From contig OZ260664.1 of NCBI GenBank assembly GCA_965285935.1, positions 68,200,001-68,264,000 on the forward strand: a stretch of DNA of 64,000 bases, read 5' to 3'. Below are positions 39,262-43,905 of the stretch, piece by piece (the first letter of the stretch is position 1; every line of letters starts with the position of its first letter). The stretch is from Ophelia neglecta (lineage: Eukaryota). The translations under genes were made by a program, and so were the position numbers. Under the pieces are notes generated by a model. It made no database searches. It saw only the letters and a list, made by a program, of their open reading frames with translations, and had not been told where the DNA came from.

Positions 39262-39268
39262 TATAAAA
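39262..39268 (+). promoter_or_regulatory. TATA box of the trefoil-protease gene
   Basis: TATAAAA 83 nt upstream of the ATG, with an initiator-like CCATTAC about 25-30 nt downstream. Confidence 0.6.
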
Positions 39269-39344
39269 GCCAAAATAGAATACTATTCCATTACAGAAGA
39301 AAGGGGCAACATCTATTTCGTAAGGTTCGCAGAGAATTGACATT

Positions 39345-39471
39345 ATGATGCCTAACTGTTTGATTACGGTTATCGTATTTCTGACATTAGGAATTTCCAA
39401 CATTGTAATTGGAAGCGAATTCTCTGTTTGGAAGACTATTAGCAAGGAGAGCAGATCATTGACAGAAAATG
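39345..39471 (+). CDS. Protease exon 1: signal peptide
   Basis: [23 protein letters not shown] hydrophobic leader; donor G|GTAAGC at 39472, phase 1; TATAAAA about 80 nt upstream. Confidence 0.85.
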
Positions 39472-42400
39472 GTAAGCATCCAAGAGAGAATCATGACTCG
39501 ATTGGTTTTACTCAGGAAGAGGAAATTGAGTGTTTGGAATTCGAAATGAATATAAGCTCTGACCCGATTATTTTTTTTCAGCTCGTGTCAGCTGGAAGGA
39601 ATGTAACTTAAATGAGAGTAACCGCGTTGATTGTGGTTTCTATGGAGTTAGCGAGGAGCAATGTTACGCGAGGGAATGTTGCTGGGGAGAATCTAATTCT
39701 GAAGACGTACCGTGGTGTTACCACTCTAAACGTAATTCAGTTGATAAGTTTTTGTAACCTATAAGCAAACTTTAGTGTGTTGACCATCACAGGCCTCTGC
39801 TGGGGCATTTGAAATGAACTATACACGGTTTTGCAAATTTATAAATGCATTAATGATTTCCTATGAGGTTACTAGAACTGTTATAATGTTAATGTTCCAT
39901 TTATATAGCTACACTCAGGGCAACATGCTCTGCTAGTCCAGATGAGAAATTGGAATGTGGTTATTATGGTATGCGAAAGGAACAGTGCCTGGCCATGGAC
40001 TGTTGTTGGCAACCCTCCGGAGTCCGGGAGGCACCTTGGTGTTATCAACCCATACGTAATTATAATGATTGTTTTATAATCCTTGACATGTTCATATTAA
40101 TGCAGTGATGGTGGTAAGAAGGTTTGGCTATGTTTTCGCTTATTTAAACAAAGGATTTGCTTTAAATTACCGAAAGGCCGCCTTTGCCAATTAGAAATAG
40201 GAGTCGCTATCGTGTAGCCTGGAACGGTTTTTGAATGCGCTGAACATAATGATGAGACCAAAAACAACACAGCGGGTCACATTCATATCGCTGGTCAAAG
40301 GTACGGGTAAGCTCGAGGAAACTTTTTCTCAATCCTCCAGCCCGCTCCTGACCCTTAGTACGTCATATTGATACACTTAAAAAAGAGGACGTTTATGCCA
40401 TAGATAACGTTCAATATTCGAATTCAATAACGTGTCGAAAACTTGTAAAACTGTATTGATTTGACTTTGGATATATCGCCAGCAATTCAAAACTCAACCA
40501 TATGGGTTGCAATATTCTTCTTATCAGTACTGAATTTGGCACGTGAAAACGGATGACAGTGGTGTCCAGTACAAAGTGTACTTACGCATGAAAAGTAATG
40601 CCGCCCGTCACACAACATGCCTTTCAGGAATATTATTCAAACTGGATTTGATATTGCTTATAATCTAAATTGCGTTTAACTCAGATGAATGGTGTAAGCG
40701 CGTTTGGGCATTGCGTAGATGATTATGCACGTGTGTTTATTGAATCAACCTCATCACCGTTTAATTTACTTACCTTTCTAGTTAATAATGGTATAACTAC
40801 GCTGTGACTATTCTCCAGGATCTACGTCATATGCCTTGTAGGTGTTCCGGTCTACGAGGGGGAATGCGGCGTTCCAGCCATCCCTCCCAACGGGCTTTCT
40901 CGCATAGTGGGTGGAGAAGAAGCCAAACCGCATAGTTGGCCGTGGATGGTCAGCTTACAGAATGAGGACGGACACATCTGTGGTGCCAGTCTAATCAACA
41001 ATCAGTGGGTGGTGTCAGCTGCTCATTGTCTGGGAGGGTACAAACAACTGTTTTAATTCATGTGTCTGCGTATCAATAACAATCAACTTAAATTGGAGGC
41101 TAGAACGCTCCTTCATTATTTTCATATATACGCTTTTGGTGCATGACTATTAAGAGTCACGTATTGTTTATACTAGATTTGAATAATTATAATATCGTTA
41201 AGACTTTCTATGAACATTCACTGCATTTTGAATAACGTTGACTTCAGATTGCCGGGAGGCAACTCGTTTGCCGTCCTTGGACTACACAGTAGATCAGAGT
41301 TTGACGAACCACAGCAGTCTTTTGCTATTGTCGAATTCATTCAGCATGAAGATTATGGGAGAAATGATAAAGGTTTTTCAAGTGCCGACATTATGGTTGG
41401 AAAATTAGATAGGGCTGTAGTGTTTAACGATTACATATCCCCAGTGTGTCTCATGGAAACAGACAAAGATATAGCCGGCAGACACGCATACGGAATTGGC
41501 TGGGGCCAATTGAGAGGTAAATGTATAATGGCTTAAGGTCCTAGGTATAAGAAGCCTTCATCGTCATTATCTTCATCTTCATTAATAGAAAGCTGTTTGT
41601 CAAAATAACAACTGATGTTTGTGCTTTTGCCCTCTGTCATCTACTATTTTATTAGTTTACCAGGTAACATGGACTCTGTATGGCAACATAATGTGTTTGT
41701 CCTGCTTGTACATTGGTGTCGGATTCTTGTCCTTCTCGACGCCATTGACGCTAAGCATGTCACGTTAAAACAACATACGCACAAACATATTTACAACAAA
41801 CAACAACAAACAACAAGTTTTTAAGTGCCAGGAACGCATTACTAAAATCATGTACCGGAAATTTTATTACTGTTATCCAAAAAGCAAATTGGCCGCAAAG
41901 GCGCTAGAGTCGCGTAATTGCGTGTTAATATAGTGACATGCAAGTCATATTAACAAACTATGGATAACGGGGTTATAAGTTGTCATTTGCCTCTACCTCG
42001 AGGTTATTACCGATTATTAAGCCCCTGTCCTGGCTACATGACGCAAGATAGGCATGTGTAATTAAATGCTATATATCAAGCGCAAAACGAGTACCGTAAA
42101 TTTATAGCACATAAGAATTTGAAATCACGTGATGTAGCCAAATACCTGTGATCCTGTGTTCTGTATAACAGTATAGTCCTGTCCACTTTGGGATTATTAA
42201 AGCTACTTTATCCCATCTCTAGAGGATTTGGGACCACCGGACAAACTTCAGCAGGTGATGACGCCTATTTTGAGCAATGATCAGTGTAACGACCCTGACT
42301 GGTACGACGGTGGAATAGACGATAACATGCTGTGTGCTGGCTACGAGGAAGGAGGCAAAAGCGGTTGCTTTGTTAGTAATATCAAAATCACAGTTTTCAT

Positions 42401-43035
42401 CGGAACCAGGATATCCTTAATGATTCAGCTTGTCATTCAAACATTTATCAGTTATCAAAATGTTTAAGACTTACTTTAAATTAAAGTTATCAATGGATAT
42501 GATTAAATTTGTATTTGTCGAACTAAGATTTCGTGCTAGATTGCTGAATTTTAATTGACCTGTAAAATTTTACCCTTTTCAATGCTCTTAGTATCAGTGA
42601 AATAGACTAATTGTGCGCCAATTGTCCGTGTGCCAATCTTGGATTACTCATGTATTGACAGGACTGCTTTTTTTTATTCAATTTCTATTGGGATTCAAGG
42701 CTTTTTCTTGCATAATTTCCAAGAATTTACCCCGAGTGCCCCAATAACACTGGATCCCCGTGCACTTAGAAGAACAGAATGACCCGGTACAATGAATCTA
42801 AGAGCCATGCACATCACAGTACTACTGTTCATTATAAAATTACAGTCGGAAGAACATCTATTTGCAGGGAGACTCCGGTGGTCCATTAGTTATCAACGAG
42901 GACGGACATTGGACCTTAGTTGGTTTGGTCACTGGAGGGTGGAAGTGCGGTGGTAGTCGAACCCCCGGGTACTTCTGCAGAGTGTCTACCTACATCGAAT
43001 GGATAGAGCAGACTATCGCAGAGCATGGAGGGTAG
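39345..43035 (+). CDS. Secreted double-trefoil (P-type) domain S1A serine protease zymogen, 401 aa; join(39345..39471,39582..39731,39909..40055,40842..41037,41248..41516,42223..42371,42868..43035)
   Basis: Seven exons with GT-AG borders total 1206 nt and stay in frame. Protein: signal peptide, two 6-Cys trefoil domains, linker ECGVP, activation site LSR|IVGG, catalytic triad motifs AAHC, ADIM and GDSGGP, stop TAG at 43033-43035. Confidence 0.93.
39582..39731 (+). CDS. Protease exon 2: trefoil domain 1
   Basis: Acceptor TTTTTTTTCAG; encodes [40 protein letters not shown]; 150 nt, phase 1-1. Confidence 0.92.
39909..40055 (+). CDS. Protease exon 3: trefoil domain 2
   Basis: Encodes [40 protein letters not shown]; 147 nt, phase 1-1; donor C|GTAATT. 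Confidence 0.92.
40842..41037 (+). CDS. Protease exon 4: linker, activation site and catalytic His
   Basis: Encodes [20 protein letters not shown]|[44 protein letters not shown]. Confidence 0.94.
41248..41516 (+). CDS. Protease exon 5: catalytic Asp region
   Basis: Within ORF 41210..41536: [10 protein letters not shown]...YISPVCL...YGIGWGQLR; acceptor CTTCAG, donor G|GTAAAT. Confidence 0.94.
42223..42371 (+). CDS. Protease exon 6
   Basis: [17 protein letters not shown]...[15 protein letters not shown]; phase-0 donor GTTAGT just before GDSGGP, a common intron position in trypsin-family genes. Confidence 0.94.
42868..43035 (+). CDS. Protease exon 7: catalytic Ser and C-terminus
   Basis: Acceptor TTTGCAG; encodes [55 protein letters not shown]. 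Confidence 0.95.
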   Translation, partial: GDSGGPLVINEDGHWTLVGLVTGGWKCGGSRTPGYFCRVSTYIEWIEQTIAEHGG

Positions 43036-43077: not shown

Positions 43078-43083
43078 AATAAA
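43078..43083 (+). terminator. Polyadenylation signal of the protease gene
   Basis: AATAAA 43 nt after the stop codon; a second AATAAA lies near 43211. Confidence 0.6.
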
Positions 43084-43905
43084 GCAAATCGTAACTGTAT
43101 GCATCACATTTCATCATTTACGAACAGTTCTATTTTCAATGGAATAGCAAAATGACGAATTTATTAACCAAATTAGGCATAATTTAGTGAAAAGCCTATT
43201 TACTGGTACAAATAAAGTAAAGAGTGTTTAGTGTAAAGTAGTGTTTATACACACACACTATTCCCATATACTTGCGAGCAGTACATGGGATAAATACCAA
43301 TCCAAAACAGCCTAACTTTGGCCTTTATCGGTGTATTAAGCAGTTCCGTGCCTCCAGAACAAAATGCTGCTCGTGCAAATACCTGGACACAGTTCGGTGT
43401 TCACTACACAAAAATCCCAAAAGTTAGGCTGCTTTGATTTTTTCCTTTTCCGGTAGATACGCATAATAGGCTACATGCCTAGAGAGCTGCTGATCACGAT
43501 ATATCCCTTGTGACAAAGCTTTTAAGTTTGGTCATTTGGACTAGGTTGTTTAACGAATTTTATTGTCTGGCTATGTCTTTGGATCTTAAATCACGAATCG
43601 CGTATCAGCGTTTCATGCTCTTACAAACAGTTTTTGTCCTACGTGGTAAATTAAATATGTGTCATATGGGCGGATACTCACAATGCATTAACCCATATCT
43701 GTTTGTCTTCAAAAGAAAATGGCCAACCCTCGACAATTGTGCAACTATTTGCGAACTGTTTTTATTTTACGATGGCTTAAGAAAGGCGCGAGCACAGATT
43801 ACTAGCTCCTCTGCTTTGAAAGCCAAATGCGACTTTCGAATTGTATACTTTTTAAGCTGTATGCATTTTAAATCTGGGGGATATTAAGAGTTTGGGGACA
43901 AATTA

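What the first reader, a model, noticed from the sequence alone, without database searches (positions are those of the whole stretch)
39345..43035. Double-trefoil / serine protease fusion: a candidate glycan- or mucus-targeted protease
Seen: signal peptide, two complete trefoil domains and an S1A protease with an intact His/Asp/Ser triad. Established: trefoil domains are best known from TFF1-3, ZP1/ZP4, frog mucins and GH31 glucosidases (sucrase-isomaltase, MGAM, GAA), and vertebrate TFFs bind the mucin glycan GlcNAc-alpha1,4-Gal. I know no characterised trefoil-trypsin fusion. Inference: a TFF2-like module docks the enzyme on mucus or glycosylated surfaces such as gut, epidermis or egg coat.
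Basis: partly seen in the sequence, partly recalled or inferred. Interest (0 to 1): 0.8.

Follow-up and report, generated by a model that had tools for sequence, protein, structure and literature searches.

The report
Annelid trefoil-chymotrypsinogen fusion gene family
This is a real, intact seven-exon gene for a secreted protease precursor that carries two mucus-peptide-type "trefoil" modules in front of a chymotrypsinogen-like enzyme; it is one of at least 12 such genes in this worm genome, relatives occur in other annelids, and nobody seems to have described or tested the family.

Summary
Window 39345-43035 (+) holds seven GT-AG exons summing to 1206 nt (401 codons plus stop). They encode a signal peptide, two Pfam Trefoil domains on separate phase 1-1 exons, and a four-exon S1A protease with an intact His/Asp/Ser triad.

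No RNA runs exist for this species, so the exon 3-4 junction is unseen. Four other results support the fusion:
- All 12 paralogues in this genome keep the same exon order and phases; 10 look intact. dN/dS is about 0.1 on the trefoil exons.
- Public transcript or metagenome contigs encode the same layout as one uninterrupted ORF. One 22.6-kb contig carries two intronless copies.
- Capitella teleta has the same gene, but its annotation leaves the trefoils out.
- The protease exons have no start codon or signal peptide of their own.

The enzyme part is a chymotrypsinogen homologue, not a trypsin. It starts at the Cys1-Gly-Val-Pro-Ala-Ile activation peptide, has an Arg|Ile cleavage site and keeps Cys122. 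The trefoil pair should therefore stay disulfide-tethered after activation. The window copy has Ser189, so it is not expected to cut after Arg/Lys.

Glycan or mucus docking is plausible but untested. No name or paper for this architecture was found. This is a new variant of mosaic serine proteases, of moderate interest.

The parts
39262..39269 (+). TATA-like box, 83 nt upstream of the ATG
   Evidence: Read directly from the sequence. Not tested for function.
39345..39471 (+). Exon 1: ATG, a hydrophobic signal peptide of about 23 residues, and a short charged linker; ends in phase 1 at G|GTAAG
   Evidence: Ten of the 11 paralogues have an equivalent first exon about 100-130 nt (up to about 1.2 kb) upstream of the first trefoil exon, with the same phase-1 donor.
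39582..39731 (+). Exon 2 (150 nt, phase 1-1): trefoil domain 1 with six Cys; Asp before Cys II at 39629-39631; Trp at 39713-39715
   Evidence: Pfam PF00088, E 8.7e-15. Best solved relative is porcine TFF2, E 3.5e-17. 71-88% identical in the paralogues.
39909..40055 (+). Exon 3 (147 nt, phase 1-1): trefoil domain 2 with six Cys; Glu before Cys II; Trp kept
   Evidence: Pfam PF00088, E 1.1e-12. Porcine TFF2, E 7.8e-13. 63-73% identical in the paralogues.
40842..41037 (+). Exon 4 (phase 1-2): short linker; chymotrypsinogen-type activation peptide starting at Cys1 (40865-40867); Arg15|Ile16 cleavage site (40901-40906); His57 (41024-41026)
   Evidence: Pfam Trypsin positions 1-44. Best PDB match is bovine chymotrypsinogen A from its residue 1, E 7e-20. 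73-79% identical in the paralogues.
41248..41516 (+). Exon 5 (phase 2-1): Asp102 (41387-41389) and Cys122 (41447-41449); Cys136 replaced by Ala
   Evidence: Pfam Trypsin positions 51-129; alignments.
42223..42371 (+). Exon 6 (phase 1-0): Cys168, Cys182, Ser189 (42360-42362) and Cys191
   Evidence: Pfam Trypsin positions 134-176; alignments.
42868..43035 (+). Exon 7 (phase 0 to stop): Gly193-Asp194-Ser195 (Ser 42874-42876), Cys220, Gly226, an extra Cys near position 229 (42976-42978), stop codon
   Evidence: Pfam Trypsin positions 178-220; alignments.
43078..43083 (+). First AATAAA after the stop codon (a second lies at 43211)
   Evidence: Sequence only; no 3' end data.

Best explanation
The gene encodes a secreted zymogen built from a signal peptide, a charged linker of about 20 residues, two tandem trefoil (P-type) domains and a chymotrypsinogen-homologous S1A protease. 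A protease that cuts after Arg cleaves the Arg15|Ile16 bond and so activates the enzyme. This activator may be one of the two Asp189 members of the same family. Cys1 sits nine residues after trefoil 2 and Cys122 is kept, so the trefoil pair should stay disulfide-tethered to the back of the active enzyme, as the activation peptide does in chymotrypsin. This also resembles the stem domains of CLIP proteases, hepsin and TMPRSS2. The window copy has Ser189 and Gly226, so it should prefer non-basic, chymotrypsin- or elastase-type P1 residues. The trefoil pair most likely acts as a targeting module that holds the enzyme on glycosylated material such as mucus, mucin-coated food or gut surface. Digestion in the gut lumen is the likeliest setting. 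Shown: gene structure, domains, catalytic and activation residues, family conservation, and single-ORF relatives. Inferred: the tether, the activation route, the specificity, the glycan or mucus targeting and the tissue.
For: Gene and domains.

Fusion:
- All 12 paralogues of exon 5 have two trefoil exons upstream on the same strand. Exon order, sizes (150/147/190-196/about 270/about 149/about 170 nt) and phases are identical. Ten of the 11 other copies have a matching signal-peptide first exon.
- Trefoil 1 always pairs with trefoil 1, and trefoil 2 with trefoil 2.
- Median dN/dS is 0.105 on the trefoil exons, 0.102 on exon 4 and 0.189 on exons 5-7. Synonymous sites are near saturation, so the family is old and the trefoils are under constraint.
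- Intron 3 holds no alternative signal-peptide exon, and no in-frame ATG precedes exon 4.
- Public proteins P0130, P0151, P0153-P0156, P0158 and P0279 (373-430 aa) carry two Trefoil domains plus Trypsin in one uninterrupted ORF.
- L023 has two tandem intronless copies.
- P0279 is a Trinity transcript with a complete ORF. It comes from cells of a parasite of a polychaete gut, and the authors report host-cell contamination in those data.
- Capitella teleta has the same six collinear exons with introns of about 55-160 nt.

Zymogen and tether: exon 4 aligns to bovine chymotrypsinogen A from Cys1 through His57, E 7e-20. Cys122 is present.

Specificity spread: residue 189 is Asp in 2 paralogues and Gly, Ala, Ser or Thr in the other 10. 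Residue 216 is Gly, Val or Thr.

Targeting module: the trefoil exons are closest to TFF2, TFF1 and TFF3. Domain 1 keeps the sugar-contacting Asp/Asn and Trp in 12 of 12 copies.

The AF2 model of relative P0153 gives folded trefoil domains (pLDDT about 75-86) and a protease at pLDDT above 90. Its closest solved structures are S1 proteases, and the TMPRSS2 and hepsin matches also cover part of the stem region.
Against: - No RNA from this species: the three runs found are DNA, and no joints were seen. The exon 3 to exon 4 junction is therefore unproven here.
- An intron-3-retaining transcript would stop 16 codons after exon 3 and yield a trefoil-only peptide.
- Trefoil 2 has Glu or Ala where TFFs have Asp/Asn.
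- No A4GNT-family hit in the genome (weak evidence).
- No expression, localisation, binding or activity data.
- The window copy is derived: Thr214-Gly215 replaces Ser-Trp, the Cys136-Cys201 disulfide is lost, and there is one extra unpaired Cys.
- The gut setting rests on one contaminated parasite transcriptome, plus a syllid study that lists 'trefoil factor 2' and 'serine protease 27' among foregut-enriched genes. It is not shown that these are this family.
- The AF2 inter-domain geometry is uncertain (pTM 0.66).
Confidence: 0.6

Rival explanations
1. There are two separate transcription units: a TFF2-like double-trefoil peptide gene followed by a chymotrypsinogen gene. On this view the fusion is an artefact of reading exons in a row.
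For: The public Capitella teleta protein ELT95274.1 covers the protease only, and the collection's gene table lists a separate 99-aa Trefoil product just upstream. No RNA is available for this species. Retention of intron 3 would give a trefoil-only peptide.
Against: The Capitella protease model starts at an out-of-frame ATG inside the trefoil-2 exon and has no signal peptide. In the window, exon 4 starts in phase 1, has no upstream in-frame ATG, and intron 3 has no signal-peptide exon. Twelve of 12 paralogues keep the linkage and phases across near-saturated synonymous divergence. Eight full-length public ORFs, two intronless genomic copies and one assembled transcript all encode the fused protein.
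Confidence: 0.05
2. The fusion is real, but the trefoil pair is a protein-interaction or regulatory module, as the clip domain is in arthropod CLIP proteases. The family would then form an extracellular activation cascade in immunity, wound sealing or clotting, not a glycan-docked digestive enzyme.
For: The nearest ESM-Atlas clusters by sequence features are CLIP-domain proteases, score 0.94. The layout is the same: a small disulfide-knotted N-terminal module, a Cys tether and an Arg|Ile activation site. The family mixes Asp189 members (possible activators) with non-Asp189 members. Trefoil 2 lacks the Asp/Asn sugar contact. Vertebrate TFFs also form protein partnerships (my own knowledge).
Against: The catalytic domain's closest named relatives are digestive chymotrypsins and elastases, not clip proteases. 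Trefoil 1 keeps the lectin residue pair. The Atlas ranking is only a lead.
Confidence: 0.2
3. The fusion is real, but it acts in reproduction, as an egg-envelope or sperm protease whose trefoils bind egg-coat glycoproteins.
For: Ovochymase and acrosin are among the more distant hits.
Against: No CUB or ZP context. Those hits score lower than the chymotrypsins. A family of 12 genes with a varied S1 pocket fits digestion or defence better. There are no expression data either way.
Confidence: 0.07
4. The window copy itself is a decaying or non-proteolytic paralogue of an otherwise functional family.
For: It has Thr214-Gly215 in place of Ser-Trp, a feature shared only with the pseudogene L021. It has also lost Cys136-Cys201 and gained an odd Cys. 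Two of the 12 family members are pseudogenes.
Against: The reading frame is intact, all splice sites are canonical and the triad and oxyanion Gly193 are present. dN/dS against L011 is 0.11 on the trefoils and 0.16 on exons 5-7. In three runs of one sample, all four indels lie in introns. The five exon SNPs are two synonymous, two in one signal-peptide codon, and one Glu-to-Asp change.
Confidence: 0.1

Closest known systems
Vertebrate chymotrypsinogen A/B (S1A; PDB 1acb/1chg)
   Same: The Cys1-Gly-Val-Pro-Ala-Ile activation peptide, the Arg15|Ile16 site, His57/Asp102/Ser195, Cys1-Cys122, Cys42-Cys58, Cys168-Cys182, Cys191-Cys220, Ser189 and Gly226 are all present. Exon 4 aligns from residue 1 at E 7e-20. 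Chymotrypsins and elastases are the best named hits.
   Different: About 120 extra N-terminal residues (linker plus two trefoils) precede Cys1. The window copy lacks Cys136-Cys201, has Thr214-Gly215 and has an extra Cys near position 229. Two paralogues and most public relatives have Asp189, which gives trypsin-type specificity.
TFF2 / spasmolytic polypeptide and TFF1, TFF3 (trefoil factor peptides)
   Same: Two tandem P-type domains, each with six Cys in the canonical spacing and the conserved Trp. Each domain sits on its own exon. Best PDB matches are porcine TFF2, then TFF3 and TFF1. Domain 1 keeps the Asp/Asn plus Trp sugar contacts.
   Different: It is not a free peptide: the pair is fused to an enzyme. 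It lacks the extra Cys pair that ties the two TFF2 domains together. Domain 2 has Glu or Ala at the sugar-contact position. The ligand is unknown.
Arthropod CLIP-domain serine proteases
   Same: A small disulfide-rich N-terminal module, a linker Cys tether and Arg/Lys|Ile activation. They are the nearest clusters by language-model features.
   Different: No clip domain (no PF12032 hit). The catalytic domain is closer to chymotrypsins.
Other invertebrate chymotrypsinogen-like proteases with an N-terminal module: CUB-chymotrypsinogen of amphioxus and ShK-chymotrypsin-like proteases of cnidarians
   Same: The same principle, one binding module placed in front of the Cys1 activation peptide. They are seen as hits with PF00431 or PF01549 plus PF00089 at 37-41% identity.
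   Different: The module is different (CUB or ShK, not trefoil). I know of no functional link between them.
Hepsin / TMPRSS2 (type II transmembrane serine proteases)
   Same: The stem domain is disulfide-tethered to the back of the protease. They are the top Foldseek matches to the AF2 model of relative P0153, with about 285 aligned columns.
   Different: They are membrane-anchored with an SRCR/LDLa stem. This protein is secreted with a trefoil stem.

Membership tests
Trefoil (P-type) domain, Pfam PF00088 | Score above the curated Pfam cut-off (21 bits) | tested here: met
   54.8 and 48.0 bits for exons 2 and 3.
Trefoil (P-type) domain, Pfam PF00088 | Six Cys in the canonical spacing (adjacent Cys IV-V, Trp before Cys VI) | tested here: met
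   Six Cys in each domain, in the window and in all 12 paralogues. They align Cys for Cys with porcine TFF2.
Trefoil (P-type) domain, Pfam PF00088 | Three-loop fold with 1-5, 2-4, 3-6 disulfides | tested here: inconclusive
   The AF2 model of relative P0153 gives compact trefoil regions at pLDDT about 75-86.
TFF lectins (GlcNAc-alpha1,4-Gal binding, PMC7221086) | Asp/Asn before Cys II and Trp before Cys VI | tested here: inconclusive
   Domain 1 has Asp (9 copies) or Asn (3 copies) plus Trp in 12 of 12. Domain 2 has Glu (10) or Ala (2) plus Trp. Binding itself was not tested.
TFF peptides (TFF1-3) | Small secreted peptide made only of one or two trefoil domains | tested here: not met
   The trefoils are the N-terminal part of a 401-residue protease precursor.
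Peptidase S1A (chymotrypsin family), Pfam PF00089 | Full-length trypsin-fold domain | tested here: met
   Exons 4-7 cover profile positions 1-220 in order.
Peptidase S1A (chymotrypsin family), Pfam PF00089 | Catalytic His57, Asp102 and Ser195, with oxyanion Gly193 | tested here: met
   All are present. Among the paralogues, only L014 has Met at position 193.
Peptidase S1A (chymotrypsin family), Pfam PF00089 | Zymogen activation site Arg/Lys15|Ile/Val16-Val-Gly-Gly | tested here: met
   Ser-Arg|Ile-Val-Gly-Gly in the window. The Arg followed by Ile/Val is invariant in 12 of 12 copies.
Chymotrypsinogen subfamily | Cys1 in the activation peptide paired with Cys122 | tested here: met
   Both Cys are present and aligned to bovine and fish chymotrypsinogen. 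Bond formation is inferred.
Chymotrypsinogen subfamily | Ser189, Gly216 and Gly226 S1 pocket | tested here: inconclusive
   Ser189 and Gly226 are clear. The 214-217 segment reads Thr-Gly-Gly-Trp and is one residue shorter, so the assignment of residue 216 is uncertain.
Chymotrypsinogen subfamily | Five canonical disulfides, including Cys136-Cys201 | tested here: not met
   The window and nine other paralogues lack both Cys136 and Cys201. L019 and L020 keep them.
CLIP-domain serine proteases | Clip domain (PF12032/PF18322) | tested here: not met
   No such Pfam hit on any exon or on relative P0130.

The most novel reading that the evidence does not exclude
The family is a self-contained, glycan-targeted proteolytic system of annelid mucus or gut. 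Asp189 members (the ancestral type, with a Kunitz-inhibitor gene next door) would cut the shared Arg|Ile site and so activate a radiated set of non-Asp189 effectors. The trefoil pair would dock the effectors on mucin-type glycans. The conserved odd cysteine of the derived subgroup would couple them covalently to mucins or to each other, as the seventh Cys of TFF1 and TFF3 does. This would make them an animal counterpart of bacterial mucinases that carry carbohydrate-binding modules, and the first direct evidence that invertebrate trefoil modules are lectins.
Probability: 0.15. Interest if true: 0.75.

Novelty: new variant of a known kind. Interest (0 to 1): 0.5.

Why it matters
What trefoil domains do at the molecular level was argued for decades. 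Lectin activity was shown only in 2020, and only for vertebrate peptides. Here an old, constrained invertebrate family hard-wires a trefoil pair to a protease through a chymotrypsinogen-type tether. This is a Rosetta-stone type of argument that the module acts as a targeting device, and it gives a direct handle for testing what invertebrate trefoils bind. It also adds a new stem module to the list of mosaic S1A proteases. It shows how a digestive-type chymotrypsinogen radiated in annelids, with a varied S1 pocket and a rewired disulfide pattern. It also exposes an annotation gap: the public Capitella protein model leaves the trefoils out, which is why the architecture cannot be found by name.

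Tried and rejected
- RNA evidence: the only runs holding this stretch are three DNA runs of one sample. Laying them gave full intron coverage and no joints, so the junction could not be tested.
- A profile of exon 4 searched against 1.84 billion representatives was swamped by multi-protease proteins. Only one full-length family member (P0130) reached the top 150.
- The ESM Atlas returned CLIP proteases only, and no trefoil-protease cluster of 50 or more members.
- Literature searches found no trefoil-protease fusion. Hits were beta-trefoil lectins, ZP proteins and TFF reviews.
- Accession searches for the source samples found no paper, so most public relatives cannot be assigned to a species.
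- PF04572 (A4GNT/A4GALT family) gave no hit in this genome, but it gave no hit in the control genomes either. This is not evidence of absence.
- Owenia fusiformis relatives are tandem proteases with no trefoil exons detected in the 7 kb of fetched sequence upstream of the first copy, so the fusion is not universal in annelids.
- The window holds no further copy of the gene and no Kunitz neighbour.
- The joined (spliced) protein was not sent to any search, fold or complex tool. All searches were done exon by exon, by reference. In scripts, exon coordinates were concatenated only to count codons and dN/dS. Relatives with natural single ORFs were used for folding.
- The window has no N stretches and I took no contig for human.
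Full report
**Observation**

The window has 36-43% G+C (2-kb bins) and only short ORFs, which fits an intron-rich animal genome. Earlier notes of this scan call it an annelid. That agrees with the close match to Capitella teleta found below.

Three-frame translation and splice-site inspection give seven exons on the + strand: 39345-39471, 39582-39731, 39909-40055, 40842-41037, 41248-41516, 42223-42371 and 42868-43035. Every intron is GT..AG and the phases fit (1, 1, 1, 2, 1, 0). The sum is 1206 nt, that is 401 codons plus a stop.

Pfam was scanned exon by exon, by reference:
- Trefoil on exons 2 and 3, at E 8.7e-15 and 1.1e-12.
- Trypsin profile positions 1-44, 51-129, 134-176 and 178-220 on exons 4 to 7.
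- His57, Asp102, Ser195 and Gly193 are all present.

Exon 1 encodes Met and a hydrophobic leader, and ends at a consensus phase-1 donor. A TATAAAA box lies 83 nt before the ATG, and AATAAA lies 43 nt after the stop.

**Is the fusion real?**

No RNA data exist for this species. The only runs holding the stretch are three DNA runs from one sample. Their contigs cover the introns and show no joints. I therefore looked for conservation of the linkage.

In this genome:
- Exon 5 has 12 matches (47-60% identity) on contigs C7, C5 and C2. A Trefoil search of the genome places two trefoil exons 1-3 kb upstream of every one of them, on the same strand.
- After fetching the loci, all 11 other copies show the same order of six exons. 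The trefoil exons have the same sizes (150 and 147 nt), the protease exons have near-identical sizes, and the splice phases are the same. Ten of the 11 have a recognisable signal-peptide first exon with the same phase-1 donor.
- Trefoil 1 of each copy is most similar to trefoil 1 of the window (71-88%), and trefoil 2 to trefoil 2 (63-73%). The double-trefoil arrangement therefore predates the expansion.
- Ten copies look intact. L018 has an in-frame stop, and L021 has a frameshift and a stop.
- Median pairwise dN/dS is 0.105 on the trefoil exons, 0.102 on exon 4 and 0.189 on exons 5-7. Synonymous distances are around 1.4-1.6 or saturated. This is an old family in which the trefoils are as constrained as the activation segment.
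- In the window, intron 3 has no alternative signal-peptide exon, and the frame of exon 4 has no upstream ATG. The protease exons therefore cannot make a secreted protein on their own.

In other organisms:
- A profile of exon 4 from the 12 copies was searched against 1.84 billion representatives. It returned one full-length single-domain hit, P0130 (425 aa), and Pfam finds two Trefoil domains plus Trypsin in it.
- Using P0130, and then a family alignment, as queries gave P0151, P0153-P0156, P0158 and P0279 (373-430 aa) and the fragments P0152, P0157 and P0315. All have trefoils directly before the protease in one uninterrupted ORF.
- None of these carries a name from any source. Among all 373 proteins fetched, a trefoil HMM finds trefoils only in these 11.
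- Their contigs are 1.0-2.5 kb, except L023. L023 is a 22.6-kb contig with two tandem intronless copies.
- P0279 is listed by EukProt under Siedleckia nematoides, as TSA GHVU01091352 with a complete ORF. That transcriptome was made from hand-picked cells of animal parasites (this species lives in a polychaete gut, by my own knowledge), and the authors state that host cells and gut contents could not be fully excluded (PMC6733595). I read P0279 as a host polychaete transcript. That is an inference, but either way it is an mRNA that carries both parts.
- Capitella teleta scaffold KB309179 has the same six exons in order, with introns of about 55-160 nt and the same phase-1 boundary between trefoil 2 and the protease. 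The public protein ELT95274.1 covers only the protease. Its N-terminus comes from an out-of-frame ATG inside the trefoil-2 exon and is not a signal peptide. The collection's gene table lists a separate 99-aa Trefoil product just before it. This split model explains why the architecture does not surface by name.
- Owenia fusiformis relatives are tandem proteases with no trefoil exons detected in the 7 kb of fetched sequence upstream of the first copy.

**What the enzyme part is**

Exon 4's best solved match is bovine chymotrypsinogen A. The alignment starts at its residue 1, the Cys1-Gly-Val-Pro-Ala-Ile activation peptide, and runs through the Arg15|Ile16 site to His57 (E 7e-20). Chymotrypsins, elastases and CTRL are the best named full-length hits for the catalytic domain of the relatives. 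Amphioxus CUB-chymotrypsinogens and cnidarian ShK-chymotrypsin-like proteins appear as analogous forms with an added N-terminal module.

Cys122 is kept. After activation, the segment before Arg15, and the trefoil pair with it, should therefore remain disulfide-linked to the enzyme. Only nine residues separate trefoil 2 from Cys1.

The AF2 model of relative P0153 has mean pLDDT 83, with the protease above 90 and the trefoils at about 75-86. Its best structural matches are S1 proteases, and the TMPRSS2 and hepsin matches extend into the stem region. The inter-domain geometry is not reliable (pTM 0.66).

**Two subgroups**

- L019 and L020, like the Capitella protein and most of the public relatives, keep all five chymotrypsin disulfides and have Asp189, which gives tryptic specificity. 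L019 is the paralogue closest to Capitella's protease (61%) and to P0157 (69%). L020 has a homologue of the Kunitz-inhibitor gene that lies next to the Capitella gene. This is probably the ancestral type.
- The other ten copies, including the window gene, have lost Cys136 and Cys201 together and gained one Cys near position 229. Residue 189 is Gly, Ala, Ser or Thr, and residue 216 is Gly, Val or Thr. That is a radiation of S1-pocket types behind a constant targeting and activation module.
- The window copy has Ser189 and Gly226, and an unusual Thr214-Gly215. Its mature protein has an odd number of Cys (21).

**Trefoil module**

The best solved relatives are porcine TFF2, then TFF3, TFF1 and MGAM. 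In human TFFs, only two side chains touch GlcNAc-alpha1,4-Gal: an Asp/Asn just before Cys II and the Trp before Cys VI (PMC7221086). Domain 1 has Asp or Asn plus Trp in all 12 paralogues. Domain 2 has Glu or Ala plus Trp.

Domain 1 may therefore have lectin-type binding, while a TFF2-like divalent cross-linker is less likely. The A4GNT/A4GALT family was not detected in the genome, but the control was uninformative. The ligand is open.

**Function**

The best reading is a secreted zymogen, activated at Arg15, whose trefoil stem stays attached and holds the enzyme on glycosylated substrates or surfaces. Four things point to gut digestion:
- The catalytic domain is of a digestive type.
- The family expansion comes with a varied S1 pocket.
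- P0279 was found in a gut-derived preparation.
- A syllid study lists 'trefoil factor 2' and 'serine protease 27' among foregut-enriched transcripts (PMC6350857). This is a lead only.

A CLIP-like cascade role is the main rival. Nothing here tests tissue, binding or activity.

**Novelty**

Mosaic S1A proteases with tethered N-terminal modules are a well-known kind. I found no description of a trefoil stem in the literature searched or among named proteins. I class it as a new variant of a known kind. It is conserved in at least some annelids and is present, unnamed, in public data.

**Method note**

The spliced protein was never joined for a search, fold or complex job.

Noticed in passing
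L027 12608-13683 (Capitella teleta KB309179) and L020 (G000:C2, about 109.79 Mb): A Kunitz/BPTI inhibitor gene lies 1.5 kb downstream of the Capitella trefoil-protease gene. Its homologue lies next to the Asp189 paralogue L020 in this genome, but not in the window. This looks like a conserved protease-inhibitor neighbourhood that marks the probable ancestral locus.
   Followed up: partly
window 42976-42978, and the same position in nine paralogues: The derived subgroup lost the Cys136-Cys201 pair and gained a single Cys near position 229, which leaves an odd number of cysteines. This could be a free thiol or an intermolecular disulfide, reminiscent of the seventh Cys of TFF1 and TFF3.
   Followed up: no
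L023 3261-4454 and 10465-11712 (ENA ERZ25084518, 22.6-kb contig): Two tandem intronless copies of the trefoil-protease gene from an unidentified organism (38% G+C). They may be a retrocopy that was later duplicated.
   Followed up: partly
L027 9703-11093 (Capitella teleta, ELT95274.1): The public gene model omits the trefoil exons and starts the protease at an out-of-frame ATG without a signal peptide. This is probably a mis-annotation.
   Followed up: yes
G000 genome-wide: The genome has 67 Trefoil exon matches, of which 24 belong to this protease family. Other clusters lie on C1 (47.6, 49.6, 100.7, 129.7 and 137.1-137.2 Mb), C5 (73.85-73.93 Mb), C2 (55.5 Mb) and C8 (55.8 Mb). Trefoil modules are heavily reused in this worm.
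   Followed up: no
G000:C5:79.12 Mb (L018), G000:C7:76.77 Mb (L021), G000:C5:80.79 Mb (L014): L018 has an in-frame stop in exon 5. L021 has a frameshift in exon 5 and a stop in a trefoil exon. L014 has Met in place of the oxyanion Gly193. The family is undergoing gene birth and death.
   Followed up: partly
P0166 and P0167 (Logan contigs): These are close protease relatives (50-51% identical to P0153). Instead of trefoils, they carry a charged, Glu/Lys-rich N-terminal extension of about 100 residues before the Cys1 peptide. This is an alternative stem on the same scaffold.
   Followed up: no
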